64,000 nucleotides of DNA, taken from assembly GCA_950097015.1 (NCBI GenBank), contig CATNEN010000039.1, forward strand, positions 1,054,001 to 1,118,000, given 5' to 3'. Every line of letters begins with the position of its first letter. The first letter of the stretch is position 1. Source of the DNA: Macrostomum hystrix (taxonomy: Eukaryota > Animalia > Platyhelminthes). The notes under the pieces were generated by a model that ran no database searches, was not told the origin of the DNA, and worked only from the letters and a program-made list of their open reading frames with translations. This document shows, one piece after another, positions 9,001 to 49,551 of this stretch. Position numbers and translations under genes: made by a program.

Positions 9001-12000
9001 TGTATCATCTCTATCACTACAGTGTATCATCTCTATCACTACAGTGTATCATCTCTATCACTACAGTGTATCATCTCTATCACTACAGTGTATCATCTTT
9101 ATCACTACAGTGTATCATCTCTATCACTACAGTGTATCATCTCTATCACTACAGTGTATCATCTCTATCACTACAGTGTATCATCTCTATCACTAAAGTG
9201 TATCATCTCTATCACTACTGTGTATCATCTCTATCACTACAGTGTATCATCTCCATCACTACAGTGTATCATCTCTATCACTACAGTGTATCATCTCTAT
9301 CACTACAGTGTATCATCTTTATCACTACAGTGTATCATCTCTATCACTACAGTGTATCATCTCCATCACTACAGTGTATCATCTTTATCACTACAGTGTA
9401 TCATCTCTATCACTACAGTGTATCATCTCTATCACTACAGTGTATCATCTCTATCACTACAGTGTATCATCTTTATCACTACTGTGTATCATCTCTATCA
9501 CTACTGTGTATCATCTCTATCACTACAGTGTATCATCTCTATCACTACAGTGTATCATCTCCATCACTACAGTGAATCGTCTCTATCAACAGTGTATCAT
9601 CTTTATCACTACAGTGTATCATCTCCATCACTACAGTGTATCATCTCCATCACTACAGTGTATCATCTTTATCACTACAGTGTATCATCTCTATCACTAC
9701 AGTGTATCATCTCTATCACTACAGTGTATCATCTCTATCACTACAGTGTATCATCTCTATCACTAAAGTGTATCATCTCTATCACTACAGTGTATCATCT
9801 CTATCACTAAAGTGTATCATCTCTATCACTACTGTGTATCATCTCTATCACTACAGTGTATCATCTCCATCACTACAGTGTATCATCTCCATCACTACAG
9901 TGTATCATCTCCATCACTACAGTGTATCATCTCTATCACTACAGTGTATCATCTCTATCACTACAGTGTATCATCTTTATCACTACAGTGTATCATCTCT
10001 ATCACTACAGTGTATCATCTCTATCACTACAGTGTATCATCTCCATCACTACAGTGAATCGTCTCTATCAACAGTGTATCATCTCTATCACTACAGTGTA
10101 TCATCTTTATCACTACAGTGTATCATCTCTATCACTACAGTGTATCATCTTTATCACTACAGTGTATCATCTCTATCACTACAGTGTATCATCTCTATCA
10201 CTACAGTGTATCATCTCTATCACTAGTGTATCATCTCTATCACTACAGTGAATCATCTCTATCACTACAGTGTATCATCTCTATCACTACAGTGTATCAT
10301 CTCTATCACTACAGTGTATCATCTTTATCACTACAGTGTATCATCTCCATCACTACAGTGTATCATCTTTATCACTACAGTGTATCATCTCCATCACTAC
10401 AGTGTATCATCTCCATCACTACAGTGTATCATCTCTATCACTACAGTGTATCATCTCTATCACTACAGTGTATCATCTTTATCACTACAGTGTATCATCT
10501 CTATCACTACAGTGTATCATCTCTATCACTACAGTGTATCATCTCTATCACTACAGTGTATCATCTTTATCACTACTGTGTATCATCTCTATCACTACTG
10601 TGTATCATCTCTATCACTACAGTGTATCATCTCTATCACTACAGTGTATCATCTCCATCACTACAGTGAATCGTCTCTATCAACAGTGTATCATCTCTAT
10701 CACTACAGTGTATCATCTTTATCACTACAGTGTATCATCTCTATCACTACAGTGTATCATCTTTATCACTACAGTGTATCATCTCTATCACTACAGTGTA
10801 TCATCTCTATCACTACAGTGTATCATCTCTATCACTAGTGTATCATCTCTATCACTACAGTGAATCATCTCTATCACTACAGTGTATCATCTCTATCACT
10901 ACAGTGTATCATCTCTATCACTACAGTGTATCATCTTTATCACTACAGTGTATCATCTCCATCACTACAGTGTATCATCTCTATCACTACAGTGTATCAT
11001 CTCTATCACTACAGTGTATCATCTCTATCACTACAGTGTATCATCTTTATCACTACTGTGTATCATCTCTATCACTACAGTGTATCATCTCTATCACTAC
11101 AGTGTATCATCTCTATCACTAGTGTATCATCTCTATCACTACAGTGTATCATCTCTATCACTAAAGTGTATCATCTCTATCACTACTGTGTATCATCTCT
11201 ATCACTACAGTGTATCATCTCCATCACTACAGTGTATCATCTCCATCACTACAGTGTATCATCTCTATCACTACAGTGTATCATCTCTATCACTACAGTG
11301 TATCATCTCTATCACTACAGTGTATCATCTTTATCACTACTGTGTATCATCTCTATCACTACAGTGTATCATCTCTATCACTACAGTGTATCATCTCCAT
11401 CACTACAGTGAATCGTCTCTATCAACAGTGTATCATCTCTATCACTACAGTGTATCATCTTTATCACTACAGTGTATCATCTCTATCACTACAGTGTATC
11501 ATCTCTATCACTACAGTGTATCATCTCTATCACTACAGTGTATCATCTTTATCACTACAGTGTATCATCTCTATCACTACAGTGTATCATCTCCATCACT
11601 ACAGTGAATCGTCTCTATCAACAGTGTATCATCTCTATCACTACAGTGTATCATCTTTATCACTACAGTGTATCATCTCTATCACTACAGTGTATCATCT
11701 TTATCACTACAGTGTATCATCTCTACCACTACAGTGTATCATCTCTATCACTACAGTGTATCATCTCTATCACTAGTGTATCATCTCTATCACTACAGTG
11801 TATCATCTCTATCACTAAAGTGTATCATCTCTATCACTACTGTGTATCATCTCTATCACTACAGTGTATCATCTCCATCACTACAGTGTATCATCTCTAT
11901 CACTACAGTGTATCATCTCCATCACTACAGTGTATCATCTCTATCACTACAGTGTATCATCTCTATCACTACAGTGTATCATCTTTATCACTACAGTGTA

Positions 12001-15000
12001 TCATCTCTATCACTACAGTGTATCATCTCCATCACTACAGTGTATCATCTCTATCACTACAGTGTATCATCTCCATCACTACAGTGTATCATCTTTATCA
12101 CTACAGTGTATCATCTCTATCACTACAGTGTATCATCTCTATCACTACAGTGTATCATCTCTATCACTACAGTGTATCATCTCTATCACTACAGTGTATC
12201 ATCTCTATCACTACAGTGTATCATCTCTATCACTACAGTGTATCATCTTTATCACTACAGTGTATCATCTTTATCACTACAGTGTATCATCTCTATCACT
12301 ACAGTGTATCATCTCCATCACTACAGTGTATCATCTCTATCACTACAGTGTATCATCTCTATCACTACAGTGTATCATCTCTATCACTACAGTGTATCAT
12401 CTCTATCACTACAGTGTATCATCTCTATCACTACAGTGTATCATCTCTATCACTACAGTGTATCATCTTTATCACTACAGTGTATCATCTCCATCACTAC
12501 AGTGTATCATCTTTATCACTACAGTGTATCATCTCTATCACTACAGTGTATCATCTCTATCACTACAGTGTATCATCTCCATCACTACAGTGTATCATCT
12601 CTATCACTACAGTGTATCATCTCTATCACTACAGTGTATCATCTCTATCACTACAGTGTATCATCTCTATCACTACAGTGTATCATCTCTATCACTACAG
12701 TGTATCATCTCTATCACTACAGTGTATCATCTCTATCACTACAGTGTATCATCTTTATCACTACAGTGTATCATCTCTATCACTACAGTGTATCATCTCT
12801 ATCACTACAGTGTATCATCTCTATCACTACAGTGTATCATCTCTATCACTAAAGTGTATCATCTCTATCACTACTGTGTATCATCTCTATCACTACAGTG
12901 TATCATCTCCATCACTACAGTGTATCATCTCTATCACTACAGTGTATCATCTCTATCACTACAGTGTATCATCTTTATCACTACAGTGTATCATCTCTAT
13001 CACTACAGTGTATCATCTCCATCACTACAGTGTATCATCTTTATCACTACAGTGTATCATCTCTATCACTACAGTGTATCATCTCTATCACTACAGTGTA
13101 TCATCTCTATCACTACAGTGTATCATCTTTATCACTACTGTGTATCATCTCTATCACTACTGTGTATCATCTCTATCACTACAGTGTATCATCTCTATCA
13201 CTACAGTGTATCATCTCCATCACTACAGTGAATCGTCTCTATCAACAGTGTATCATCTTTATCACTACAGTGTATCATCTCCATCACTACAGTGTATCAT
13301 CTCCATCACTACAGTGTATCATCTTTATCACTACAGTGTATCATCTCTATCACTACAGTGTATCATCTCTATCACTACAGTGTATCATCTCTATCACTAC
13401 AGTGTATCATCTCTATCACTAAAGTGTATCATCTCTATCACTACAGTGTATCATCTCTATCACTAAAGTGTATCATCTCTATCACTACTGTGTATCATCT
13501 CTATCACTACAGTGTATCATCTCCATCACTACAGTGTATCATCTCCATCACTACAGTGTATCATCTCCATCACTACAGTGTATCATCTCTATCACTACAG
13601 TGTATCATCTCTATCACTACAGTGTATCATCTTTATCACTACAGTGTATCATCTCTATCACTACAGTGTATCATCTCTATCACTACAGTGTATCATCTCC
13701 ATCACTACAGTGAATCGTCTCTATCAACAGTGTATCATCTCTATCACTACAGTGTATCATCTTTATCACTACAGTGTATCATCTCCATCACTACAGTGTA
13801 TCATCTTTATCACTACAGTGTATCATCTCTATCACTACAGTGTATCATCTCTATCACTACAGTGTATCATCTCCATCACTACAGTGTATCATCTCTATCA
13901 CTACAGTGTATCATCTCTATCACTACAGTGTATCATCTCTATCACTACAGTGTATCATCTCTATCACTACAGTGTATCATCTCTATCACTACAGTGTATC
14001 ATCTCTATCACTACAGTGTATCATCTCCATCACTACAGTGTATCATCTCTATCACTACAGTGTATCATCTCTATCACTACAGTGTATCATCTCTATCACT
14101 ACAGTGTATCATCTCTATCACTACAGTGTATCATCTCTATCACTAAAGTGTATCATCTCTATCACTACTGTGTATCATCTCTATCACTACTGTGTATCAT
14201 CTCTATCACTACAGTGTATCATCTCCATCACTACAGTGTATCATCTCCATCACTACAGTGTATCATCTCTATCACTACAGTGTATCATCTTTATCACTAC
14301 AGTGTATCATCTCTATCACTACAGTGTATCATCTCCATCACTACAGTGTATCATCTCTATCACTACAGTGTATCATCTCTATCACTACAGTGTATCATCT
14401 TTATCACTACTGTGTATCATCTCTATCACTACAGTGTATCATCTCTATCACTAAAGTGTATCATCTCCATCACTACAGTGTATCATCTCCATCACTACAG
14501 TGTATCATCTCTATCACTACAGTGTATCATCTCTATCACTACAGTGTATCATCTTTATCACTACAGTGTATCATCTCTATCACTACAGTGTATCATCTCT
14601 ATCACTACAGTGTATCATCTCTATCACTACAGTGTATCATCTTTATCACTACTGTGTATCATCTCTATCACTACTGTGTATCATCTCTATCACTACAGTG
14701 TATCATCTCTATCACTACAGTGTATCATCTCCATCACTACAGTGAATCGTCTCTATCAACAGTGTATCATCTCTATCACTACAGTGTATCATCTTTATCA
14801 CTACAGTGTATCATCTCTATCACTACAGTGTATCATCTTTATCACTACAGTGTATCATCTCTATCACTACAGTGTATCATCTCTATCACTACAGTGTATC
14901 ATCTCTATCACTAGTGTATCATCTCTATCACTACAGTGAATCATCTCTATCACTACAGTGTATCATCTCTATCACTACAGTGTATCATCTCTATCACTAC

Positions 15001-16644
15001 AGTGTATCATCTTTATCACTACAGTGTATCATCTCCATCACTACAGTGTATCATCTCTATCACTACAGTGTATCATCTCTATCACTACAGTGTATCATCT
15101 CTATCACTACAGTGTATCATCTTTATCACTACTGTGTATCATCTCTATCACTACAGTGTATCATCTCTATCACTACAGTGTATCATCTCTATCACTAGTG
15201 TATCATCTCTATCACTACAGTGTATCATCTCTATCACTAAAGTGTATCATCTCTATCACTACTGTGTATCATCTCTATCACTACAGTGTATCATCTCCAT
15301 CACTACAGTGTATCATCTCCATCACTACAGTGTATCATCTCTATCACTACAGTGTATCATCTCTATTACTACAGTGTATCATCTCTATCACTACAGTGTA
15401 TCATCTTTATCACTACTGTGTATCATCTCTATCACTACAGTGTATCATCTCTATCACTACAGTGTATCATCTCCATCACTACAGTGAATCGTCTCTATCA
15501 ACAGTGTATCATCTCTATCACTACAGTGTATCATCTTTATCACTACAGTGTATCATCTCTATCACTACAGTGTATCATCTCTATCACTACAGTGTATCAT
15601 CTCTATCACTACAGTGTATCATCTCTATCACTACAGTGTATCATCTCTATCTCTACAGTGTATCATCTCTATCACTACAGTGTATCATCTCTATCACTAC
15701 AGTGTATCATCTCTATCACTACAGTGTATCATCTCTATCACTACAGTAAATCGTCTCTATCACTATAGTGTATCATCTCTATCTCTACAGTGTATTATCT
15801 CTATCACTACAGTGTATCATCTCTATCACTACAGTAAATCGTCTCTATCTCTACAGTGTATCATCTTTATCACTACTGTGTATCATCTCTATCACTACAG
15901 TGTATCATCTCTATCACTACAGTGTATCATCTCTATCACTACAGTGTATCATCTCTATCACTACAGTGTATCATCTCTATCTCTACAGTGTATTATCTCT
16001 ATCACTACAGTGTATCATCTCTATCACTACAGTAAATCGTCTCTATCTCTACAGTGTATCATCTCTATCACTACAGTGTATCATCTCTATCACTACAGTG
16101 TATCATCTCTATCACTACAGTGTATCATCTCTATCACTACAGTGTATCATCTCTATCACTACAGTGTATCATCTCTATCACTACAGTGTATCATCTCTAT
16201 CACTACAGTGTATCATCTTTATCACTACAGTGTATCATCTCTATCACTACAGTGTATCATCTCTATCACTACAGTGTATCATCTCTATCACTACAGTGTA
16301 TCATCTCTATCACTACAGTGTATCATCTCTATCTCTACAGTGTATCATCTCTATCACTACAGTGTATCATCTCTATCACTACAGTGTATCATCTCTATCA
16401 CTACAGTGTATCATCTCTATCACTACAGTGTATCATCTCTATCACTACAGTGTATCATCTCTATCACTACAGTGTATCATCTCTATCACTACAGTGTATC
16501 ATCTCTATCACTACAGTGTATCATCTCTATCACTACAGTGTATCATCTCTATCACTACAGTGTATCATCTCTATCACTACAGTGTATCATCTCTATCACT
16601 ACAGTGTATCATCTCTATCACTACAGTGTATCATCTCTATCTCT
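1..16644. repeat. 22-bp satellite array (CTACAGTGTATCATCTCTATCA)n, about 750 units, truncated by the window start
   Basis: Directly visible tandem unit with a small set of recurring point variants and 20-bp deletion units. All + strand ORFs in 28..16665 are three-frame translations of this unit. Confidence 0.99.
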
Positions 16645-25358: not shown

Positions 25359-28300
25359 ATGCATAGCAATGCAAGGAAATCTGACATCATCCACTTTAAT
25401 GTTGGTGGGAAAAAGTAAGTGTTACTTATTGACTATTAATCATCTAATCAATTCCTTCTTTTTAAAATGACATTTAATTGTAGACAATTAAGATGTCCAT
25501 GTACTGTACATGCATTGCTTACTGCTATTAAGGTAGATATAAATGCTGCAGTTCAGTTCAGTCCAGGGGCTGGTGGCTACCTTACTGGATATGTTTATCC
25601 CAGCTAATGCTAGTACGGCCATTTTACAGCTGGTTAAACTAGATCATAGCAATTGTTGGCAATTCTATCCACCCAACTGCTCAGGTTCTCAACCTCCCAG
25701 CAGACTCTGCTTTCCATTCCGGACACCTTCTTCCGCGCCCTGCTCAGCGGCAGTCTGGACACCCAGCGAGACGAAACTGGCGCCATCTTCATCGACCGAG
25801 ATCCCAAACTGTTCTCCCTGATCCTCAACTACTTGCGCACCCGGGATCTGCCCAGCAGCGACAATGTCGACTGGCTTGCGTTGAAGAACGAGGCTGAGTT
25901 CTATGGCGTCACCTGCCTTTCCAGGAAGCTCAGTCTCTGTGAGGAGGCCTATTATGGCGCCTGCGGCAACGTCTACTTTCATGCCCACATCAATGCCATC
26001 GAGGCCCAGGAGGTGAGCCGCATTGCTGCTGAGATTCTTATTGTTTAGTCATTTGGAAGGCCGCTTACCCTCCACTGTCATCAGCAGCAGTGATTTGGAG
26101 GGCCGCTTACCCTCCACTGTCATCAGCAGCAGTGATTTAGAGGGCCGCTTACCCTCCACTGTCATCAGCAGCAGTGATTTAGAGGGCCGCTTACCCTCCA
26201 CTGTCATCAGCAGCAGTGATTTGGAGGGCCGCTTACCCTCCACTGTCATCAGCAGCAGTGATTTAGAGGGCCGCTTACCCTCCACTGTCATCAGCAGCAG
26301 TGATTTAGAGGGCCGCTTACCCTCCACTGTCATCAGCAGCAGTGATTTGGAGGGCCGCTTACCCTCCACTGTCATCAGCAGCAGTGATTTGGAGGGCCGC
26401 TTACCCTCCACTGTCATCAGCAGCAGTGATTTGGAGGGCCGCTTACCGTCTGAATTCGCAGGTGACGCTGATCCGGTGCCAGCAGTCCTGGCTGGCTGTG
26501 GCCACCAACAACTCCGTCCGCCTGTACCGCCTGAAGGAGGCAGCCGGCTGGCAGCCGGTGTGGCTAAGTCAGCCTGGCGCATTTCCCGAGCGCGTGCACC
26601 GCCTGGCTCTCAGCGGCCGCCTCGGTGGAGCCTCCGGGCGGGGCTGCAGCGGCGGCGATCATCGTCTGCTTGGCGTGGCTACCTCCGGCGGCGACCACTG
26701 CGTCCTTCTGTTCTCCATTGCCGAGGCCGCCGGAGACGAGCCGCTTGGCGACGCTGTTGGCTTCGCGCCGCCGCCCAGAGAGCTGAAGAGCCCCGGCCCT
26801 GTGGACGACCTGCTGTTCGTCAGCAATCAGCTGGTCGCAGTGAGCAGGTGAGCAGACCATGGAGAGCTTGTTACTGCTTGCAACCCAGTGGATAGAGCCT
26901 TAAACTTCTGACCGAGAGAAAAGCAATGGAGTCACATGTGATGGGATCATTGCTGTGATGCGATGAAGAGCGAGATTTCGAAATTTAGCCCAAGGGAAGC
27001 CATTTGAATGCTTAAGCAATTCACTTAAATTCCCTCAGTTGACCTAGCTCATAAGTAGGTACCAGCAATTGCTGGGCTAGAAATTTCATGGATGTCTCCT
27101 CAAGCCGATCTACTGCCCTACTGGGCCCATGAATCTCAACGCAGGCGAGCGGGTGCCATAGGCGTGCTGCACCACGCCAGCGGCAACTGGCAGCTGCAGT
27201 CGATCGGAGCGCCGGTCACCAGCCTGGATGTGGCCGGCAGCGAGTTCCTGCTGCTGGGCTGCGCTAACGGCCAGATCTGCCATATAGACATGGAGAAACT
27301 GCCGGTGAGCTTGCAGTGTGCCTGCGCCAATAGCCACTTGGCAACTATTTTATTTCTCCCTCCGCTCTGTGGCATCCCAGATGCGCCTAAAAGACAATGA
27401 CCTGCTGGTGACGGAGCTCTACCGTGACCCGGGTCAGGAGGCTGTGACTTCGCTTAGCGTCTACCTAACCCCGAAGACCTCCTTGTCCGGCGGCAAGTGG
27501 CTGGAGATCGCCTACGGCACTGCCAGCGGCCTGGTGCGCGTCATCGTCCAGCACCCGGAGACGCCTGGTCACGCGCCTCAGCTCTTCCAGACATTCAGCG
27601 TGCATCGTAGGCCTGTTGAGCACGTCAGCCTGTCTGAGCGGCACCTCATCAGCGTCTGCTCAGAGCTGGGTCACGTGCGCAGCTGGCAGGTGACCAGATT
27701 TCGCGGCATGATCAGCACACAGCCGGGCAGCACTCCGCTTGCCAGCTTCCACGTGCTGCACTTCAGCTGCTCGCCCGGCCGGCATCCGGGACCGCACGGC
27801 GAGAAGGATGACTTGCAGATCTTCGTGCAGCAGGTTGGATCAGATCTGGGATCTAATTACTCGTAGCTAAGCAAACTCTATTTTACCAGACAATTCTTGA
27901 GCCTGTAAAATTCTGCGAGACTTGTCGATTGCGCGGTGCATCTGAAGGCCGCATACGCTTGTTCTGTCCATAGACTGGGGTTGGGCCACACCCATCCGCA
28001 TCTAACCTAGCTAAGGCTGGTAACAATTTAATAGCCGGCGGAACTGAAGCGAATCAGAGTTAAATGTTTTTCTAAAGACTTTTTCAGTGCAGTCGGTCCC
28101 ATTGACAAGTGCTATACAACAGATAAGACACGGGAGAGATGAGACAGTACAACAGATAAGACACGGGAGAGATGAGACAGTACAACAGATAAGACACGGG
28201 AGAGATGAGACAGTACAACAGATAAGACACGGGAGAGATGAGACAGTACAACAGATAAGACACGGGAGAGATGAGACAGTACAACAGATAAGACACGGGA

Positions 28301-28998
28301 GAGATGAGACAGTACAACAGATAAGACACGGGAGAGATGAGACAGTACAACAGATAAGACACGGGAGAGATGAGACAGTACAACAGATAAGACACGGGAG
28401 AGATGAGACAGTACAACAGATAAGACACGGGAGAGATGAGACAGTACAACAGATAAGACACAGGAGAGATGAGACAGTACAACAGACGAGCGGCTCAGCT
28501 CCAAGTCTCAAAACCCGCCCCCAGGTGCTGCCAGCAGCCAGCTCCCTGTTCATCCGCCTGGCGCCCAACGGCCGCCGTGTCTGCTCGATTCGCTCAGTTG
28601 ACGGCTCGGCCATCACCGCCTTTGCAACGCACGAGTACGAGGGCTGCAGCTCCCGCCTGGGCTCAAGGCCGCGCCGCTATCTCATCACCGGCCACGCCAA
28701 CGGCAGCCTGCAGATGTGGGACCTGACCACTGCGCTGGAGCAACTGCCGCCGCAGCCGGATGCTGCCGGCGCCCGTCCGCCCAGCTGCCTGCTGCCTGGC
28801 GCGGTCGCCGCCGCCGCATCGACCGGCTTTCCTCCGCAGCGTCACGTGACCGCTGCGGCAGCGGCCGTCACGTCGGCGCCTGGCGGCGGCTTCTCCGGCC
28901 ACGTTGGCGGGCCCACGCCGCGTGAACTGGTCAACCTTCTCGAGAGCTGCCACCTCACGCCTTCCAGTAGCGTGTCGAGCGGCTTGCCGGACACCTGA
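25359..28998 (+). CDS. KCTD3: BTB/POZ + WD40 protein of the KCTD3/SHKBP1 family; exons 25359-25414, 25685-26012, 26462-26847, 27145-27304, 27381-27833, 28525-28998
   Basis: All introns are GT-AG and phases join. Motifs [103 protein letters not shown] are characteristic of the family. Confidence 0.93.
26053..26447. repeat. 42-bp minisatellite (about 9.5 copies) in KCTD3 intron 2
   Basis: Unit GAGGGCCGCTTACCCTCCACTGTCATCAGCAGCAGTGATTT(G/A); ends 14 nt before the acceptor. Confidence 0.97.
28110..28486. repeat. 33-bp minisatellite (about 11 copies) in KCTD3 intron 5
   Basis: Unit ACAACAGATAAGACACGGGAGAGATGAGACAGT. Confidence 0.97.
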
Positions 28999-29083
28999 CT
29001 TTTGTTTGCTGACCCAGTGTAAGCTTCGGCCTTTGACTTTTTATTGAGATGTTTAGGCCTTCCAAACACTAAACTCTGGATTG

Positions 29084-39820: not shown

Positions 39821-40587
39821 GGCGCTGGCGAAATCTCCCAGGAGCAGCAGAACTAGAAATGCTTCCCCAATAAGCGCGAGGGGAAATTGTTAAGCCGCTG
39901 CCACGCGGCAGCCACCCACCCGCGGTTTCAGCTGTCCCAAATTGAGTCTCCGCCACCCCCTACCCAGCACTGCTCCTCGCCTTGCCGCGCTGACTGCGCG
40001 AGTGCGTGCGCGCGGAGGCGGTCCGCCCGGCAGCCGGCTATACGACCAGAGCAGTCCGCTCGAAGCAGGGGATCTGGCAGAGACTCGACCACTGAGAGAC
40101 GCCCGCCCCGCCAGTTCTGGTCCAGCGAGTCGGGGAGGGGGTGGGCAGCCGCTGCAGTTTTGCGGAATGCTCAGGCTAATTATCATTAATTCTGAGGTCA
40201 TCACTAGTCTTTATTTGGAGAGATTTATCCACAAAAGTAGCGTGCCCTTGCTCCATCATCTCACCTGCTGCTTTTCCAAGCGTCTAAATCTATAATTGCA
40301 GCTGAGTTGTTCAAGAGCACCCGTCCCGGGTTCACAGCGTCTGCTCAGTCTATTCTGTGGAAAAATTTCCACGGACGATTGAGAAGTCTCAAACTGCTAT
40401 TGTTCTCAAGGCCTTGCTATTTTTACGCAAACAAAAAGCTAGCCTTCCTTCACCATTGTCTCCATGGCGTCTGAGAGCGAAATCACCTGCTGCTATATTG
40501 TCTGCTATATTTTCGTATTTTTACACTTTGCATCTATAGCAGCCAGCTGCAATCTGAGCCTCATCTTTCCCTTTCTGAGCTTCATAT

Positions 40588-43500
40588 CTCACCCCAGGTC
40601 CTCACTCTCACCCAAGATCCTCACTCTCACCCAAGATCCTCACTCTCACCCCAGATCCTCAATCTTACCCAAGATCCTCACTCTCACCCCAGATCCTCAA
40701 TCTTACCCAAGATCCTCACTCTCACCCCAGATCCTCACTCTCACCCCAGATCCTCACTCTCACCCAAGATCCTCACTCTCACCCCAGATCCTCAATCTTA
40801 CCCAAGATCCTCACTCTCACCCAAGATCCTCACTCTCACCCCAGATCCTCAATCTTACCCAAGATCCTCACTCTCACCCAAGATCCTCACTCTCACCCCA
40901 GATCCTCAATCTTACCCAAGATCCTCACTCTCACCCAAGATCCTCACTCTCACCCCAGATCCTCAATCTTACCCAAGATCCTCACTCTCACCCAAGATCC
41001 TCACTCTCACCCCAGATCCTCAATCTTACCCAAGATCCTCACTCTCACCCAAGATCCTCACTCTCACCCAAGATCCTCAATCTTACCCAAGATCCTCACT
41101 CTCACCCAAGATCCTCACTCTCACCCCAGATCCTCAATCTTACCCAAGATCCTCACTCTCACCCAAGATCCTCACTCTCACCCCAGATCCTCAATCTTAC
41201 CCAAGATCCTCACTCTCACCCAAGATCCTCACTCTCACCCCAGATCCTCACTCTCACCCAAGATCCTCACTCTCACCCCAGATCCTCAATCTTACCCAAG
41301 ATCCTCACTCTCACCCAAGATCCTCACTCTCACCCCAGATCCTCAATCTTACCCAAGATCCTCACTCTCACCCCAGATCCTCAATCTTACCCAAGATCCT
41401 CACTCTCACCCCAGATCCTCACTCTCACCCCAGATCCTCACTCTCACCCAAGATCCTCACTCTCACCCCAGATCCTCAATCTTACCCAAGATCCTCACTC
41501 TCACCCAAGATCCTCACTCTCACCCCAGATCCTCAATCTTACCCAAGATCCTCACTCTCACCCAAGATCCTCACTCTCACCCCAGATCCTCAATCTTACC
41601 CAAGATCCTCACTCTCACCCAAGATCCCTCACTCTCACCCCAGATCCTCAATCTTACCCAAGATCCTCACTCTCACCCAAGATCCTCACTCTCACCCCAG
41701 ATCCTCAATCTTACCCAAGATCCTCACTCTCACCCAAGATCCTCACTCTCACCCCAGATCCTCAATCTTACCCAAGATCCTCACTCTCACCCAAGATCCT
41801 CACTCTCACCCCAGATCCTCAATCTTACCCAAGATCCTCACTCTCACCCCAGATCCTCAATCTTACCCAAGATCCTCACTCTCACCCAGATCCTCACTCT
41901 CACCCCAGATCCTAACTCTCACCCAAGATCCTCACTCTCACCCCAGATCCTCAATCTTACCCAAGATCCTCACTCTCACCCAAGATCCTCACTCTCACCC
42001 CAGATCCTCAATCTTACCCAAGATCCTCACTCTCACCCAAGATCCTCACTCTCACCCCAGATCCTCAATCTTACCCAAGATCCTCACTCTCACCCAAGAT
42101 CCTCACTCTCACCCCAGATCCTCAATCTTACCCAAGATCCTCACTCTCACCCAAGATCCTCACTCTCACCCCAGATCCTCAATCTTACCCAAGATCCTCA
42201 CTCTCACCCCAGATCCTCAATCTTACCCAAGATCCTCACTCTCACCCCAGATCCTCACTCTCACCCCAGATCCTCACTCTCACCCAAGATCCTCACTCTC
42301 ACCCCAGATCCTCAATCTTACCCAAGATCCTCACTCTCACCCAAGATCCTCACTCTCACCCCAGATCCTCAATCTTACCCAAGATCCTCACTCTCACCCA
42401 AGATCCTCACTCTCACCCCAGATCCTCAATCTTACCCAAGATCCTCACTCTCACCCAAGATCCTCACTCTCACCCCAGATCCTCAATCTTACCCAAGATC
42501 CTCACTCTCACCCAAGATCCTCACTCTTACCCCAGATCCTCACTCTCACCCCAGATCCTCACTCTCACCCAATATCCTCACTCTTACCCCAGATCCTCAC
42601 TCTCACCCCAGATCCTCACTCTTACCCAAGATCCTCACTCTTACCCCAGATCCTCAATCTCACCCCAGATCCTCAATCTCACCCCAGGTCCTCAATCTCA
42701 CCCCAGATCCACAATCTCACCCCAGATCCACAATCTCACCCCAGGTCCTCAATCTCACCCCAGGTCCTCAATCTCACCCCAGGTCCTCAATCTCACCCCA
42801 GGTCCTCAATCTCACCCCAGGTCCTCAATCTCACCCCAGGTCCTAAATCTCACCCCAGATCCACAATCTCACCCCAGATCCTCACTCTCACCCAATATCC
42901 TCACTCTTACCCCAGATCCTCACTCTCACCCCAGATCCTCACTCTTACCCAAGATCCTCACTCTTACCCCAGATCCTCAATCTCACCCCAGATCCTCAAT
43001 CTCACCCCAGGTCCTCAGTCTCACCCCAGATCCACAATCTCACCCCAGATCCACAATCTCACCCCAGGTCCTCAATCTCACCCCAGGTCCTCAATCTCAC
43101 CCCAGGTCCTCAATCTCACCCCAGGTCCTCAATCTCACCCCAGGTCCTCAATCTCACCCCAGGTCCTAAATCTCACCCCAGATCCACAATCTCAGCCCAT
43201 ATCCTCAATCTCACCCCAGATCCACAATCTCACCCCAGGTCCTAAATCTCACCCCAGGTCCTCAATCTCACCCCAGGTCCTCAATCTTACCCCAGGTCCT
43301 CAATCTCACCCCAGGTCCTCAATCTCACCCCAGATCCACAATCTCACCCCATATCCTCAATCTCACCCCAGATCCACAATCTCACCCCATATCCTCAATC
43401 TCACCCCATGTCCTCACTCTCAGCCAAGATCCTCAATCTCACCCCAGATCCACAATCTCACCCCAGATCCACAATCTCACCCCAGATCCTCACTCTCACC

Positions 43501-43968
43501 CCAGATCCTCACTCTCACCCCAGATCCTCAATCTCACTCCAGATCCTCACTCTCACTCCAGATCGTCAATCTAACCCAAGATCCTCACTCTCACTCCAGA
43601 TCCTCAATCAAACCCAAGATCCTCACTCTCACCCCAGATCCTCACTCTCACCCCAGATCCTCAATCTCACTCCAGATCCTCACTCTCACTCCAGATCGTC
43701 AATCTAACCCCAGATCCTCACTCTCACTCCAGATCCTCAATCTAACCCAAGATCCTCACTCTCACTCCAGATCCTCAATCTAACCCAAGATCCTCACTCT
43801 CACTCCAGATCCTCAATCTAACCCAAGATCCTCAATGTCAAACAGATCCTCAATCTCACCCCAGATCCACAATCTCACCCCAGATCCTCAATCTCACCCC
43901 AGATCCACAATCTAACCCAAGATCCTCAATGTCAATCAGATCCTCAATCTTACCCAAGATCCTCACCC
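40588..43968. repeat. 20-bp minisatellite, 3.4 kb, with 60-bp higher-order units and zoned variants
   Basis: Unit GATCCTCA(C/A)TCT(C/T)ACCC(C/A)A. Trimeric pattern to about 42500, GGTCCTC/TCCACA variants 42660-43400, CTCCAG/CTAACC variants after 43530. Confidence 0.98.
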
Positions 43969-44495: not shown

Positions 44496-44618
44496 GGGCG
44501 GCACTGGCAGCTCGGCCTGCCTTCTCTGCCATCTATGTCCGTCAGGATGTGGCCAGCCAATCGCATCGCTGCTAGAGTCTCCCACAGACTCTCTGACCCA
44601 GTCAGCGGGGGTTTAAAA
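44496..44618 (+). promoter_or_regulatory. Putative Pol II promoter of the neuropeptide-like gene
   Basis: GC box GGGCGG at 44496, AGCCAATC around 44557 and TATA-like TTTAAAA at 44612, in canonical order about 110 nt upstream of the ATG at 44728. Confidence 0.45.
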
Positions 44619-44727
44619 CCCCGACTGGTCCGCGCTGGCTCCCAGACTCGCTGCATCAGCGCTGCCCCATCAGGTGAACTCAAACTGCCCGCCAGCAATG
44701 CGCAACACATCAGCAGCTGTGAGGAAC

Positions 44728-46848
44728 ATGAGCTCAGCCGCCTCGGCTGCCGCAGGACTGGCCTGCCTGGCTTTGCTGCTGCTCAGTGGTGTCTGCACCG
44801 CCTACCCTCGGCTCAGCGGTGAGTGCCCACCTGCTGCCGACCTCGCATGACCCCGGCTCCCCTCAGCGGGCGGGGGGAAGAAATCTGAATCTGGGAAGAA
44901 AGCCAGATTCAGAGGCCAATTTCCGACTCCAGCCTGACAGACAGACTCACCGATTGCTGAGTCTGAGACTGGGTTGATGAGTCTGGGTTGATGAGGCTGC
45001 CTTAAGCGGCTCATCGCTAATCTCTTCATCCACCATTAACTCCCAGCAAATTCAGCCATTTTTTTCACTGCCTTTTAATGCGCAGTTTTTTGCTTTCAAT
45101 TTTCCTCTAATCTCGAGCCCAGACTTTTAGATTCACCGCTTTGATCATTCGATTTAATGTGCCTTCAGAAATAGCTGCCAACCATGAAGAACTGTTTTGT
45201 TCTCGCAGACAGCAGGCGGGGCCGTAGCGCCAGTTGCTAATACCCAGACTCAACACTTCCGGCCCGACCTGCATCTGCGAAGCCACTTTTTTATCCCTCC
45301 CGGGAACAAAGCCGGCCCATTGCCGGCCCACGGAGGAGAAATCTCTGAGTCCACGGCTTCCGTATTCCCCCGCTGAGCTGTCCGTGTTCCTGCTGCCTAT
45401 TAGAAAAGTGCAAAAGACTTGGAACTTAGTAGACTATTATAGAAAACTCGAAAGCTACTCACTTGAGCACTTGGGGATACAAATTAGATTAGCTGCTGCC
45501 GCTGTGTCTGCTTCACAGAGGGGCTTTTTGAAGAAGAAGGCTTTGCTGCTCTCTAAAGTTTAATTTCCAAGAATTGTTCTGTTGCCATGGAGAAGCTGGC
45601 CCTGCTCGCCAGCGACTCTCCCAAGCAGCATGTTGTCTATTGATTAAAAAGTTTGCGTAGTTATGTAAAAACTGCACGTCTTCATACTCACGACTGCCAG
45701 ACAAACTCCAGACAGCCCCTTGCTCTGTTAGCGACTCTCCTGGTGAGACTGACGACCTTCTTCCAAATCAGTCCAGAGCACTAATACTTCAAGTATTTCG
45801 CACAGCTTTTATTTACTTACGATGCGCTTCCTTCCAAATACTCTTCCTGACATCCACTCGACATCCTCCTGACATCCACTCGACATCCTCCTGACATCCA
45901 CTTGACATCCTCCTGACATCCACTCGACATCCTCCTGACATCCACTTGACATCCTCCTGACATCCACTTGACATCCTCCTGACATCCACTTGACATCCTC
46001 CTGACATCCACTTCACATCCTCCTGACATCCACTTGACATCCTCCTGACATCCACCATCCACTTGACATCCTCCTGACATCCACTCGACATCCTCCTGAC
46101 ATCCACTTGACATCCTCCTGACATCCACTTGACATCCTCCTGACATCCACTTGACATCCTCCTGACATCCACTTCACATCCTCCTGACATCCACTTGACA
46201 TCCTCCTGACATCCACCATCCACTTGACATCCTCCTGACATCCACTCGACATCCTCCTGACATCCACTCGACATCCTCCTGACATCCACTTGACATCCTC
46301 CTGACATCCACTTGACATCCTCCTGACATCCACTTGACATCCTCCTGACATCCACTTGACATCCTCCTGACATCCACTTGACATCCTCCTGACATCCACC
46401 ATCCACTTGACATCCTCCTGACATCCACTCGACATCCTCCTGACATTTACTTGAGATCCTCCTGACATCCACTTGACATCCTCCTGACATCCACTCGACA
46501 TCCTCCTGACATCCACTTGACATCCTCTTGACATCCACTTGACATCCTGCTGACATCCACTCGATATCCTCCTGACATCCCACTCGACATCCTCTTAACA
46601 TAGGTCACGACGTGCCGGCCAGCCTCGAGGCGGTGATATTCGAGCGCAGGGCTGCTCCGGACACGGACTGGACGTCACATTTCCGTCGTCTGCTCACCCA
46701 GCTTCGAAAACTCGATGATGAATCCGAGGCTGAAAGGAAAGTAAAAGACTTAAAGGACATCAAGGACTCGAATTCGCCAGTGTCAGCCGAAATCATTCGC
46801 CTGCGTAAACGCTGTCGGATTGGTCGCACCGCCTGCATGCTGGGCTGA
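44728..46848 (+). CDS. Secreted neuropeptide-precursor-like protein, 111 aa; exons 44728-44818 and 46604-46848
   Basis: Exon 1 encodes signal peptide MSSAASAAAGLACLALLLLSGVCTA-YPRLS with consensus donor G|gtgagt. The phase-1 acceptor aacatag|GT joins in frame to HDVPASLEAVIFERRAAPDTDWTSHFRRLL...IIRLRKRCRIGRTACMLG*. ATTAAA at 46891. Confidence 0.8.
45845..46594. repeat. 22-bp minisatellite (two related TGACATCC halves) in the neuropeptide gene intron
   Basis: Unit CTCCTGACATCCACT(T/C)GACATC; ends about 10 nt before the acceptor. Confidence 0.96.
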
Positions 46849-47486
46849 GCAAATTGAGCTGAAACCCATGAGACTCATTTTTTTGTACTAATTAAAATCC
46901 TGAATTTAAGATGTTGCCCTTATGCAGAATACAAAGATTACTAAAGAATTGTTGACTTATTCTGGTTGTCGAGTCAGGTGATAAACCTGATTAGCCAGAT
47001 AGATGGTTCTAGTCAATATCTACTGGGAATATTAGCAGGGGGTCTCTGTGCAAACAGAGCCAGCCAGGTAACCAATCTGTCATGTGTGTCCAGCTGTCAG
47101 TACCAGCCGTTTCTCTCTTGCCCCACAGCTCCTTTCATGTCACTCTTCAGTCTAAATTGTTTCAGCAATTGCGTCTGGAAACACAAAAACGCGTATGTTT
47201 GACAACGCGGCCGAGAACAACATTACGAGCCTCACTTAGTCTCGAGCCTCAGTGTTGCACCATTGATCAAATAAAAACGGTCACTTCAAAGCAACAAATC
47301 AAGTGTTTTGTTTGAATTCAAGTGATTTCCGGGTTTTGTACTTCTGAGCTATCAAGTTAGTGCAGACACGGCACAAGAATGTGACGGATGTACCCTGCAA
47401 GCTGGAATGGTTGAGACAACTTGGTTGCCGTCAGTCTGTAATAGTTTTGTTCTGATGCACTTTGCATAATTCTGCCAAATTGATGA

Positions 47487-47788
47487 CAATGGCCACTCTA
47501 ATAGCAGCCGAAACTGCATGTGATGCATACCAAATATGTTACTGAGCAATGGCCACTCTAATAGCAGCCGAAACTGCATGTGATGCATACCAAATATGTT
47601 ACTGAGCAATGGCCACTCTAATAGCAGCCGAAACTGCATGTGATGCATACCAAATATGTTACTGAGCAATGGCCACTCTAATAGCAGCCGAAACTGCATG
47701 TGATGCATACCAAATATGTTACTGAGCAATGGCCACTCTAATAGCAGCCGAAACTGCATGTGATGCATACCAAATATGTTACTGAGCA
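47487..47788. repeat. 60-bp tandem repeat, 5 identical copies
   Basis: Unit CAATGGCCACTCTAATAGCAGCCGAAACTGCATGTGATGCATACCAAATATGTTACTGAG. Confidence 0.97.
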
Positions 47789-48205: not shown

Positions 48206-48551
48206 CTGAACCCTTGATTGTCCTAAGAAATTAGCCAAGAACCGGTTAGACCTGCTACGTCACGAGACCAGACTGAACCCTTGATTGTCCTTAGAAATTA
48301 GGCAAGAACCGGTTAGACCTGCTACGTCACGAGACCAGACTGAACCCTTGATTGTCCTTAGAAATTAGCCAAGAACCGGTTAGACCTGCTACGTCACGAG
48401 ACCAGACTGAACCCTTGATTGTCCTTAGAAATTAGCCAAGAACCGGTTAGACCTGCTACGTCACGAGACCAGACTGAACCCTTGATTGTCCTTAGAAATT
48501 AGCCAAGAACCGGTTAGACCTGCTACGTCACGAGACCAGACTGGACCCTTG
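48206..48551. repeat. 67-bp tandem repeat, about 5 copies
   Basis: Unit CTGAACCCTTGATTGTCCTTAGAAATTAGCCAAGAACCGGTTAGACCTGCTACGTCACGAGACCAGA. Confidence 0.96.
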
Positions 48552-48835: not shown

Positions 48836-49551
48836 AAAGGACAGTAGAGGGCGGAGAAGGGCAGTAGAGGGCGGAGAAGGACAGTAGAGGGTGCAGGACA
48901 GTAGAGGGTGTTGAAGGACAGTAGAGGGTGTTGAAGGACAGTAGAGGGTGCAGAAGGACAGTAGATGGTGCAGAAGGACAGTAGAGGGTGCAGGACAGTA
49001 GATGGTGCAGAAGGACAGTAGAGGGTGCAGGACAGTAGAGGGTGCAGAAGGACAGTAGAGGGCGGAGAAGGACAGTAGAGGGTGCAGAAGGACAGTAGAT
49101 GGTGCAGAAGGACAGTAGAGGGTGCAGAAGGACAGTAGAGGGTGCAGAAGGACAGTAGATGGTGCAGAAGGACAGTAGAGGGTGCAGGACAGTAGATGGT
49201 GCAGAAGGACAGTAGAGGGTGCAGGACAGTAGAGGGTGCAGAAGGACAGTAGAGGGCGGAGAAGGACAGTAGAGGGCGGAGAAGGACAGTAGAGGGTGGA
49301 GAAGGACAGTAGAGGGCGGAGAAGGACAGTAGAGGGCGGAGAAGGACAGTAGAGGGCGGAGAAGGACAGTAGAGGGCGGAGAAGGACAGTAGAGGGCGGA
49401 GAAGGACAGTAGAGGGCGGAGAAGGACAGTAGAGGGCGGAGAAGGACAGTAGAGGGCGGAGAAGGACAGTAGAGGGCGGAGAAGGACAGTAGAGGGCGGA
49501 GAAGGACAGTAGAGGGCGGAGAAGGAGAGTAGAGGGTGCAGAAGGACAGTA
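48836..49551. repeat. 20-bp (and 17-bp variant) purine-rich minisatellite
   Basis: Unit GAAGGACAGTAGAGGG(CG/TG)(G/C)A. Confidence 0.96.

What the first reader, a model, noticed from the sequence alone, without database searches (positions are those of the whole stretch)
44728..46848. Hidden two-exon neuropeptide precursor predicted to release a cyclic amidated peptide, CRIGRTACML-NH2
Seen in sequence: a 91-nt exon (absent from the ORF track) encodes a signal peptide ending VCTA|YP and has a consensus donor. Across a 1.8-kb minisatellite-containing intron it joins in phase to an exon with RR, RR, RK, RK and RKR basic sites, ending RKR-CRIGRTACML-G-stop (46813-46845). Established knowledge: convertase cleavage after KR, C-terminal Gly as amide donor, and a single C-terminal C-X6-C peptide as the architecture of allatostatin-C-type precursors; C-X6-C rings also occur in CCHamide/excitatory peptides. 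Inference: the ring RIGRTA matches no family consensus I recognise, so this may be an undescribed or highly divergent peptide. A second possible peptide, AAPDTDWTSHF, is bounded by RR on both sides.
Basis: partly seen in the sequence, partly recalled or inferred. Interest (0 to 1): 0.85.

Follow-up and report, generated by a model that had tools for sequence, protein, structure and literature searches.

The report
Flatworm cyclic amidated peptide precursor gene
This is a real, spliced two-exon gene of the flatworm Macrostomum hystrix for a small secreted precursor whose only strictly conserved part is a ring-closed, amidated ten-residue tail peptide (CRIGRTACML-NH2), and it is one of at least eight sister genes of a peptide family that I found in no paper or curated family library searched.

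Summary
Exon 1 (44728-44818), the GTGAGT donor, the minisatellite intron, the AG acceptor and exon 2 (46604-46848, ending RKR-CRIGRTACML-G-stop) are all present. Assembled contigs of four public runs from two studies join exon 1 to exon 2 at exactly the predicted junction, and the longest runs on through the stop codon without any further splice.

Macrostomum lignano has two "hypothetical protein" orthologues. Their last 14 residues (RKRCRIGRTACMLG) are identical to the window gene, against 29% identity in the rest of exon 2.

A pattern search of the window's own genome found seven sister terminal exons. All have K-R-C-R, a ring of 6 or 7 residues, a second Cys, two residues, then Gly-stop. 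Two of them have M. lignano orthologues with the same or nearly the same peptide.

One sister (CRLKDYRACPI-NH2) was already found by this scan on other DNA and filed as an orphan without relatives.

The best reading is a classical prohormone: signal peptide removal, convertase cut after KR, one disulfide, Gly-derived amide. Processing, the cell type that expresses it and the receptor are not shown.

The ring matches no described family (AstC/somatostatin, MCH, urotensin II, CCHamide/EP, vasopressin), and no paper searched holds these peptides. The proposed second peptide, AAPDTDWTSHF, is not supported.

This is a solid new peptide family of an ordinary kind.

The parts
44657..44727 (+). 5' untranslated part of exon 1 (extent inferred). 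It contains an in-frame upstream ATG at 44698-44700, which would add MRNTSAAVRN to the N-terminus.
   Evidence: The X1 and X5 contigs carry 162 and 161 letters before the junction. Only the last 30 letters were shown, so collinearity further upstream, and whether a spliced leader is present, is not established. The upstream ATG is seen.
44728..44818 (+). The signal peptide is M1-A25 (44728-44802), followed by YPRLS and the first base of a Gly codon (phase-1 exon end).
   Evidence: Translation. The hydrophobic core LACLALLLL and the small residues at -3/-1 (C, A) are read from the sequence. The motif 'VC(T/W)A-YP' aligns with M. lignano P0004.
44819..46603 (+). Intron of 1785 nt (GTGAGT...AG).
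   Evidence: In four runs the contigs skip exactly this stretch.
45845..46601 (.). Intronic minisatellite: 22-bp unit TCCTGACATCCACTTGACATCC, about 35 copies. It ends 2 nt before the acceptor AG.
46604..46848 (+). Coding part of exon 2: acidic/basic propeptide, then the RKR site, the peptide, Gly and the stop codon.
   Evidence: HMMER match to M. lignano P0004 over residues 3-80.
46804..46812 (+). R-K-R, the predicted prohormone-convertase cleavage site. K-R is invariant in the family.
46813..46842 (+). Predicted mature peptide CRIGRTACML (Cys1-Cys8 disulfide; C-terminal amide).
   Evidence: Identical in two M. lignano proteins. Sister genes differ mostly by synonymous changes.
46843..46848 (+). 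Gly codon (amide donor) directly followed by the TGA stop codon.
   Evidence: Gly is the last residue in all 12 aligned family members.
46849..47295 (+). 3' UTR, with the poly(A) signal AATAAA at 47270-47275.
   Evidence: The X5 contig is collinear to 47270 and an X3 contig covers 47074-47295. Sequence.

Best explanation
The locus is an expressed two-exon gene of Macrostomum hystrix. It encodes a 111-aa prepropeptide (121 aa if the upstream ATG at 44698 is used) built like a classical peptide-hormone or neuropeptide precursor.

Shown:
- Transcription and the exact splice.
- Strict conservation of the tail RKR-CRIGRTACML-G in M. lignano, while the rest of the precursor has drifted.
- Membership of a family of at least 8 genes in this genome, sharing K-R-C-R-(L/I/M)-...-(A/S)-C-(P/M)-(I/L/V)-G-stop. 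Where both exons could be modelled (window gene, L003, L004, L005, L007) they also share a phase-1 intron.

Inferred from established prohormone processing:
1. The signal peptide is removed after Ala25 (VCTA|YP).
2. A prohormone convertase cuts after the invariant K-R.
3. The two cysteines form a 6-residue ring.
4. The terminal Gly is converted to an amide by PHM/PAL. This gives CRIGRTACML-NH2, calculated [M+H]+ 1120.55.
5. The peptide acts as a secreted signal on a receptor, most likely a GPCR. The most likely source is neurons or other secretory cells.

The rest of the precursor is an acidic/amphipathic spacer, not a second conserved peptide.
For: Splice junction and collinear 3' end: four runs from two studies.

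Orthologues: PAA87901.1 and PAA71115.1 of M. lignano end in the identical RKRCRIGRTACMLG. Identity is 14/14 in the tail against 16/56 elsewhere in exon 2.

Family: an own-genome pattern search gave 9 hits against 5 for the reversed-pattern control, and four of the 9 share the ring CR(I/M)GR. A wider pattern added four members with a 7-residue ring.

Gene models of the sisters: signal-peptide exons and a phase-1 intron were found for L003, L004, L005 and L007. L008 has signal-peptide candidates. L004 and L005 are confirmed by their M. lignano orthologues P0006 and P0007.

Selection on the peptide: in the terminal 13 codons the window gene and L003 differ at 5 codons synonymously and at 1 non-synonymously; L004 and L005 differ at 6 and 2.

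Invariant columns in the 12-sequence alignment: K, R, C, R, C and the terminal G.

Processing enzymes: genes with a Cu2_monooxygen domain (the domain of PHM) and genes with a convertase P domain are present in the genome.

Weak leads:
- A protein-language-model look-up of the M. lignano orthologue returns almost only peptide-hormone precursors: UTS2B 0.89, DH31, gastrin, NMS, NPFF, PDH, NMU, urotensin II.
- UniRef labels P0006 and P0007 'Secreted protein'.
Against: - No peptide has been detected.
- No tissue or cell-type expression could be obtained.
- No receptor is known.
- The signal peptide was judged by eye, not by a predictor.
- The runs are only guessed to be RNA ('RNA?' or '?'). This reading rests on the intron-less joined form and on the share of words held.
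- The start codon (44698 or 44728) and any spliced leader are unresolved.
- The Cu2_monooxygen domain also occurs in dopamine/tyramine beta-hydroxylases, so PHM itself was not singled out.
- The family has been seen only in Macrostomum so far.
Confidence: 0.78

Rival explanations
1. The family is a strongly diverged flatworm branch of a known bilaterian family of C-terminal cyclic peptides, rather than a lineage-specific invention. Candidates are allatostatin-C/somatostatin, urotensin II or MCH; CCHamide/EP is less likely. It would then signal through the matching receptor type.
For: - Same architecture as AstC, somatostatin, urotensin II and MCH: one cyclic peptide at the extreme C-terminus behind a dibasic site.
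- The C-x6-C ring has the AstC spacing. PMC8786951 defines AstC by 2 Cys separated by 6 residues and a single peptide per precursor.
- The top protein-language-model lead is UTS2B/urotensin II.
- The 7-residue-ring sisters have a basic residue two places before the second Cys, as MCH-type peptides do (PMC4772807). They also have Y-D-H where CCHamides have Y-G-H (the CCHamide motif is from my own knowledge).
- AstC-type ligands were reported as not yet found in flatworms, although allatostatin-like receptors are predicted there (PMC6114109).
Against: - No ring residue of the AstC consensus (F-N-P/A/V-I/V-S), of urotensin II (FWKY) or of MCH (M/I after Cys1, ring of 8-10) is present.
- No Pfam hit to the Somatostatin, Urotensin_II or Pro-MCH families even at E<=10.
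- CCHamide/EP peptides lie directly behind the signal peptide, not at the C-terminus (my own knowledge).
- The language-model scores are below 0.9 and are spread over unrelated hormone families.
Confidence: 0.15
2. The products are secreted cationic cyclic peptides that act directly rather than through a receptor. Examples would be host defence (antimicrobial), a toxin-like role or a reproductive-fluid role. They would be made by gland cells, with the acidic propiece neutralising the basic peptide.
For: - The peptides are small, basic (two Arg), looped by one disulfide and amidated.
- They lie behind an acidic propiece at the C-terminus, as in several antimicrobial-peptide precursors (my own knowledge).
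- The family is expanded to at least 8 genes, including a tandem pair.
- The tissue of expression is unknown.
Against: - Defence and reproductive peptides usually diverge fast in the mature part. Here the mature part is the only conserved part: 14/14 identical against 29% elsewhere between M. hystrix and M. lignano, with identical or one-residue-different peptides in two more orthologue pairs.
- The peptide is short and only weakly amphipathic.
- The invariant KR and Gly-stop are the hallmarks of regulated-pathway processing.
Confidence: 0.06
3. The open reading frame is a chance feature of a spliced non-coding transcript.
For: The ORF is short, and no protein-level evidence exists.
Against: The reading frame, the signal peptide, the KR-C...C-xx-G-stop tail and the intron phase are conserved across paralogues and in another species. 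Changes in the tail are mostly synonymous.
Confidence: 0.01

Closest known systems
Macrostomum lignano hypothetical proteins BOX15_Mlig020507g1 (PAA87901.1, 101 aa) and BOX15_Mlig034016g2 (PAA71115.1/PAA85611.1)
   Same: These are orthologues. They share the signal peptide ending ...VCWA|YP, the PAS(I/L)EAVI motif and an identical C-terminus, RKRCRIGRTACMLG.
   Different: About 29% identity outside the tail. The internal RR/RK sites of the window gene are not conserved. They are deposited only as 'hypothetical' or 'uncharacterized', with no peptide annotation.
Sister genes in the same genome: CRIGRAACML (C34:2955344), CRIGRLSCPI (C34:5652293), CRMGRFSCPI (C39:10021786), CRLFGRLSCPV (C3:4675013), CRLKDYRACPI (C12:1642230; earlier scan finding s1-300417), CRLYDHRACPL and CRMYDHRACPV (tandem pair at C38:31456512 and C38:31457573)
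   Same: All end in K-R-C-R-(L/I/M)...(A/S)-C-(P/M)-(I/L/V)-G-stop as a terminal exon. Most share an R-x-L-x-x-L-R motif in the propeptide. A signal-peptide exon and a phase-1 intron were found where both exons could be modelled.
   Different: The ring has 6 or 7 residues and the tail is ML or P(I/V/L). The propeptides are barely alignable. No exon 1 was found for the C3 gene, and the exon models of the C38 tandem pair are unresolved.
Allatostatin-C / somatostatin-type precursors
   Same: A single cyclic peptide at the extreme C-terminus behind KR/RKR. The C-x6-C ring spacing is that of AstC (PMC8786951).
   Different: No ring residue is shared with the C-(Y/M)-F-N-x-(I/V)-(S/A)-C consensus. 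Two residues plus an amide follow the ring, instead of one aromatic residue. Half of the family has a 7-residue ring. There is no Pfam hit, and the receptor is unknown.
Urotensin II / URP and MCH-type precursors
   Same: A C-terminal disulfide-ring peptide behind a dibasic site. UTS2B is the top language-model lead (0.89). The ring opening C-x-(I/L/M)-G-R faintly recalls the MCH ring opening C-M-L-G-R (MCH sequence from my own knowledge).
   Different: The urotensin II ring is CFWKYC. MCH-type peptides have Met or Ile right after Cys1, a basic residue two places before Cys2 and a ring of 8-10 residues (PMC4772807). The window peptide has Arg after Cys1, Thr two places before Cys2 and a ring of 6. 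Those peptides are not amidated.
CCHamide / excitatory peptide (EP, GGNG) family
   Same: A disulfide ring (C-x6-C in CCHamides) and a C-terminal amide. An aromatic-G/D-basic triplet in the 7-residue-ring sisters resembles Y-G-H (CCHamide sequence from my own knowledge).
   Different: Those peptides lie directly after the signal peptide and end in G-x-H-amide or GGN-amide. The window peptide lacks the aromatic residue and lies at the C-terminus of its precursor.

Membership tests
Classical secreted prohormone (neuropeptide/peptide-hormone precursor) | N-terminal signal peptide | tested here: met
   A hydrophobic core and small residues at -3/-1 are read from the translation. The site is conserved in M. 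lignano. Sister orthologues are labelled 'Secreted protein' by UniRef. No dedicated signal-peptide predictor was available.
Classical secreted prohormone (neuropeptide/peptide-hormone precursor) | Conserved basic cleavage site flanking the conserved peptide | tested here: met
   K-R is invariant in 12 of 12 sequences, directly before Cys1.
Classical secreted prohormone (neuropeptide/peptide-hormone precursor) | Mature peptide conserved while the spacer drifts | tested here: met
   14/14 identical in the tail against 16/56 elsewhere, compared with M. lignano. Changes in the tail codons between paralogues are mostly synonymous.
Classical secreted prohormone (neuropeptide/peptide-hormone precursor) | Amidation signal (C-terminal Gly) and amidating/convertase enzymes in the genome | tested here: met
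   Gly-stop is invariant. Loci with PF01082 (Cu2_monooxygen) and PF01483 (convertase P domain) lie above the cut-off in G000. PHM itself was not told apart from other family members.
Classical secreted prohormone (neuropeptide/peptide-hormone precursor) | Expression in neurons or endocrine cells; detection of the processed peptide | not testable with these tools
   Only assembled contigs could be laid. No tissue-resolved or peptidomic data were available.
Allatostatin-C / somatostatin type | Single peptide at the precursor's C-terminus with two Cys six residues apart | tested here: met
   However, 4 of the 8 family members have seven residues in the ring.
Allatostatin-C / somatostatin type | Ring consensus (Y/F/M)-F-N-(P/A/V)-(I/V)-(S/A), or similarity to the family profile | tested here: not met
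   The ring is RIGRTA. Compare Aplysia AstC, SHYSSMCMFNVVACY. No Pfam hit at E<=10.
Allatostatin-C / somatostatin type | Activates an AstC/somatostatin-type GPCR | not testable with these tools
   This needs a receptor assay.
MCH type | Met or Ile after Cys1; basic residue two places before Cys2; ring of 8-10 residues (PMC4772807) | tested here: not met
   The window peptide has Arg after Cys1, Thr two places before Cys2 and a ring of 6. Only the 7-residue-ring sisters have Arg two places before Cys2.
Urotensin II / URP | Ring C-F-W-K-Y-C | tested here: not met
   The only support is a language-model lead of 0.89. The ring motif is from my own knowledge.
CCHamide / excitatory peptide | Peptide directly after the signal peptide; Y-G-H (or W-A-I-H) in the ring; G-x-H or GGN amide end | tested here: not met
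   The peptide lies at the extreme C-terminus and its ring has no aromatic residue or His. The family features are from my own knowledge.
Vasopressin/oxytocin | C-x4-C ring, C-P-x-G-amide end, neurophysin domain downstream | tested here: not met
   The ring has 6 or 7 residues. The stop codon follows the Gly directly, so there is no neurophysin.

The most novel reading that the evidence does not exclude
The CR(L/I/M)...C-x-x-amide family is the missing flatworm ligand of an ancient bilaterian cyclic-peptide system of somatostatin/AstC/urotensin II/MCH type. It would have diverged beyond recognition by sequence and expanded to at least 8 genes in Macrostomum. That would place this signalling system in Platyhelminthes and give ligands for orphan flatworm GPCRs.
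Probability: 0.15. Interest if true: 0.65.

Novelty: new member of a known kind. Interest (0 to 1): 0.45.

Why it matters
Flatworm peptide signalling is known mostly from planarians and parasites. Macrostomum is the transgenic free-living model of the phylum.

This finding gives a transcript-supported gene and a family of at least eight cyclic amidated peptides. Four M. lignano orthologues are currently deposited only as 'hypothetical protein'. The family also absorbs a peptide that this scan had earlier filed as an orphan.

The peptides are short enough to synthesise, and M. lignano allows RNAi and transgenesis. The family is therefore directly usable for deorphanising flatworm GPCRs, and for asking whether somatostatin/AstC-type signalling exists in Platyhelminthes.

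As a kind of thing, a prohormone gene, it is ordinary.

Tried and rejected
I laid only the part beside it, as the tool advised.
- All searches used exon 1 and exon 2 separately by reference, or natural M. lignano proteins.
- Exon 2 alone found nothing in the word-indexed protein search.
- The first language-model look-up, on exon 2 alone, gave only unnamed fungal clusters and was uninformative.
- Pfam gave only sub-threshold noise: DUF2721, DUF6966, ARC6 and DUF834.
- HMMER hits P0001-P0003 are long repeat proteins that match only the spacer segment ...KDSNSPVSAEII..., many times over. I rejected them as repeat-inflated chance similarity.
- Paper searches for the peptide strings and for the M. 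lignano gene ids found nothing relevant. 'CRIGR' only hits the 'CriGri' hamster gene names.
- The supplementary files of the Schmidtea prohormone catalogue that are held as text contain none of KRCR, CPIG, CPVG, CPLG or CMLG.
- Pattern hits C26:483750 (KRCRDRGMPACPVGW..., no stop after Gly) and C38:2985932 (KRCRTHIYCTLG*, an 18-codon open frame with no signal-peptide exon) were not accepted as family members. The remaining pattern hits are repeats or unrelated sequence.
- I first considered alternative 3' exons for the C38 tandem pair. I set this aside when a second signal-peptide-like ORF was found between the two terminal exons.
- The second peptide, AAPDTDWTSHF, was rejected as a conserved product.
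Full report
**What is in the sequence**

- 44728-44817 translates to MSSAASAAAGLACLALLLLSGVCTAYPRLS, with one base (g, 44818) left over.
- GTGAGT follows at 44819.
- The 1785-nt intron holds a 22-bp minisatellite of about 35 copies at 45845-46601. It ends two bases before the acceptor AG at 46602-46603.
- From 46606 the frame reads HDVPASLEAVIFERRAAPDTDWTSHFRRLLTQLRKLDDESEAERKVKDLKDIKDSNSPVSAEIIRLRKRCRIGRTACMLG, then the stop codon.
- The leftover g plus gt (46604-46605) make a Gly codon, so the joined product has 111 residues.

One addition: an in-frame ATG lies at 44698, ten codons upstream (MRNTSAAVRN...). If it is present on the mRNA and used, the product has 121 residues.

**Is it spliced and expressed?**

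The look-up of sequencing runs listed eight holders from two studies. Four hold 7-10% of the sampled words of 44600-47000 and four hold about 30%. That is what exon-only molecules would give.

I therefore laid the part beside it, 46430-47329.
- In X1, X2, X3 and X5 (three organism labels, two studies) a contig begins to fit at 46603.
- Each carries before that point the loose letters GGTGTCTGCACCGCCTACCCTCGGCTCAGC. These are the last 30 bases of exon 1.
- The junction 44818^46604 is therefore real. The shared g makes 44817^46603 the same junction.
- The X5 contig (829 nt) has 161 nt before the junction and is collinear with 46603-47270.
- An X3 contig covers 47074-47295, and AATAAA lies at 47270-47275.
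- The mRNA is thus about 850 nt with a 3' UTR of about 450 nt. No isoform reads past MLG.

Caveats: these are assembled contigs of runs whose RNA nature is only guessed. Only 30 loose letters were shown, so the 5' end and any spliced leader are not settled.

**Which organism**

G000 has 220,453,370 bases in 42 contigs. The published Macrostomum hystrix assembly is described as about 220 Mb in 42 contigs (PMC10468722). Earlier notes of this scan name the same species. All protein relatives found are from M. lignano. The gene is single-copy in G000.

**Relatives in another species**

- Exon 2 alone found nothing in the word-indexed search, and Pfam gave nothing.
- The exhaustive HMMER search found P0004. 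This is PAA87901.1, 'hypothetical protein BOX15_Mlig020507g1 [Macrostomum lignano]', 101 aa.
- P0005 is a second M. lignano copy. That fits the hidden polyploidy of the species (abstract of PMC10468722).
- Both end in RKRCRIGRTACMLG.
- Against the window's exon 2, the last 14 aligned columns are 14/14 identical and the other columns 16/56.
- Exon 1 aligns with P0004 around the predicted signal-peptidase site: LLSGVCTAYPRLS against LLNSVCWAYPQFA. The deposited M. lignano protein runs straight across the position of the window's splice junction. This supports the model independently.

**A gene family**

A DNA pattern for KR-C-x6-C-xx-G-stop gave 9 hits in G000, against 5 for the reversed-pattern control. 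Four of the 9 share the ring:

| Peptide | Place |
|---|---|
| CRIGRTACML | this gene |
| CRIGRAACML | C34:2955344 |
| CRIGRLSCPI | C34:5652293 |
| CRMGRFSCPI | C39:10021786 |

A wider pattern, KR-C-R-x(4-8)-C-xx-G-stop, added four members with 7-residue rings:

| Peptide | Place |
|---|---|
| CRLFGRLSCPV | C3 |
| CRLKDYRACPI | C12 |
| CRLYDHRACPL | C38 |
| CRMYDHRACPV | C38, about 1 kb from the previous one |

The C12 gene is the one this scan reported earlier as an orphan 'with no detectable relatives' (s1-300417). My data show that it has relatives.

Gene structure of the sisters:
- For L003, L004, L005 and L007 I found an upstream exon with a signal peptide that ends in phase 1, and a matching acceptor. 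This is the same structure as the window gene.
- L008 has signal-peptide candidates, but its exon models are not resolved.
- I found no exon 1 for the C3 gene.

M. lignano orthologues of the sisters:
- A profile search with the family alignment retrieved P0006, which ends RRRLSKRCRIGRLSCPIG. It is the orthologue of the L004 gene, with 60% identity over exon 2.
- It also retrieved P0007, which ends KRCRLGRFSCPIG. It corresponds to the L005 gene, which has CRMGRFSCPIG.
- Their N-termini match my exon-1 models.

Conservation across the family:
- In the 12-sequence alignment the invariant columns are K, R, C, R, the second C and the final G.
- Most members also share an R-x-L-x-x-L-R motif in the propeptide.
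- In the 13 terminal codons, the window gene and L003 differ at 5 codons synonymously and at 1 non-synonymously. L004 and L005 differ at 6 and 2. This indicates purifying selection on the peptide.

**How it most likely works**

Shown:
- transcription and the splice;
- conservation focused on KR-peptide-Gly-stop;
- the gene family.

Inferred from the established prohormone pathway:
1. The signal peptide is removed after Ala25 (VCTA|YP).
2. A convertase cuts after the invariant K-R.
3. A Cys1-Cys8 disulfide forms.
4. The terminal Gly is converted to an amide.
5. The product is CRIGRTACML-NH2, with calculated [M+H]+ 1120.5536.

Supporting observations:
- The genome carries Cu2_monooxygen-domain genes (the PHM domain, though other hydroxylases share it) and convertase P-domain genes.
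- A protein-language-model look-up of the natural M. lignano orthologue returned almost only peptide-hormone precursors, with UTS2B/urotensin II on top at 0.85-0.89. This is a lead, not evidence of kinship.

Its flanking RR sites are absent from the M. lignano orthologues.

The cell type and the receptor are unknown. 'Neuropeptide' is the likeliest reading but has not been shown.

**Comparison with known families**

- AstC is defined by two Cys six residues apart and a single C-terminal peptide (PMC8786951). The window gene meets both. It shares no ring residue with AstC (Aplysia: CMFNVVAC), and half of its sisters have a 7-residue ring.
- MCH-type peptides have Met or Ile after Cys1, a basic residue two places before Cys2, and rings of 8-10 (PMC4772807). 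The window peptide meets none of these.
- The urotensin II ring (CFWKYC), the CCHamide/EP layout (peptide directly behind the signal peptide, Y-G-H in the ring) and the vasopressin layout (C-x4-C plus neurophysin) are not met. These family features are from my own knowledge.
- The family therefore works like a somatostatin/AstC/urotensin II-style C-terminal cyclic-peptide prohormone, but it cannot be filed under any of them.
- A 2018 survey stated that allatostatin ligands had not been reported in flatworms, although allatostatin-like receptors are predicted there (PMC6114109). This keeps the divergent-orthologue reading alive, at about 15%.

**Novelty**

- No paper in the searchable library holds any of the peptide strings or the M. 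lignano gene ids.
- The supplementary files of the Schmidtea prohormone catalogue that are held as text hold no similar tail.
- The orthologues are deposited only as hypothetical proteins.
- This is therefore a new peptide family of a well-known kind.

**Limits**

- Read laying and the look-up of sequencing runs allow one call each, so paralogue expression and the exon-1 side were not examined.
- The joined-exon protein was not built or searched.

Noticed in passing
window 1-16641: A 16.6-kb satellite: 22-bp unit CTACAGTGTATCATCTCTATCA, about 759 copies, 95% matches, with strong strand asymmetry (GC skew about -0.49). It runs off the start of the window.
   Followed up: partly
window 40587-43966: A 19-bp minisatellite (TCTCACCCCAGATCCTCAC, 178 copies) lies about 700 bp upstream of the peptide gene. 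More arrays lie downstream (47487-47788, 48206-48551, 48837-49551). The whole window is unusually rich in minisatellites, many of which give long spurious ORFs.
   Followed up: partly
window 25653-29000 (+): Exons of a BTB/T1-domain gene (PF02214 BTB_2, E 8e-20, at 25653-26048), followed by WD-like exons. It looks like a KCTD3/SHKBP1-type gene (family named from my own knowledge). Minisatellites fill its introns (26.0-26.5 kb and 28.1-28.5 kb).
   Followed up: partly
AG dinucleotides at 44694-44695 and 44715-44716 could serve as spliced-leader acceptors. Which start codon is used was not resolved.
   Followed up: partly
L008 (G000:C38:31455900-31464000, minus strand): Two family members, CRMYDHRACPV and CRLYDHRACPL, have terminal exons about 1 kb apart. 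One signal-peptide exon lies upstream of both, and a second signal-peptide-like ORF lies between them. They are probably a tandem gene pair. The exon models are not verified by RNA.
   Followed up: partly
L007 (G000:C12:1641700-1648300, minus strand): The earlier 'orphan' CRLKDYRACPI-NH2 gene of this scan (s1-300417) shares RLSKRCR... and the ...ACPIG-stop tail with the family described here, and has the same phase-1 two-exon layout.
   Followed up: yes
P0001 and P0003: These are long repeat proteins of unknown origin. Their unit ...DLAELKDSRGPTSAEVITTPELV... resembles the spacer segment DLKDIKDSNSPVSAEII of the window gene. I judged this to be repeat-inflated chance similarity.
   Followed up: partly
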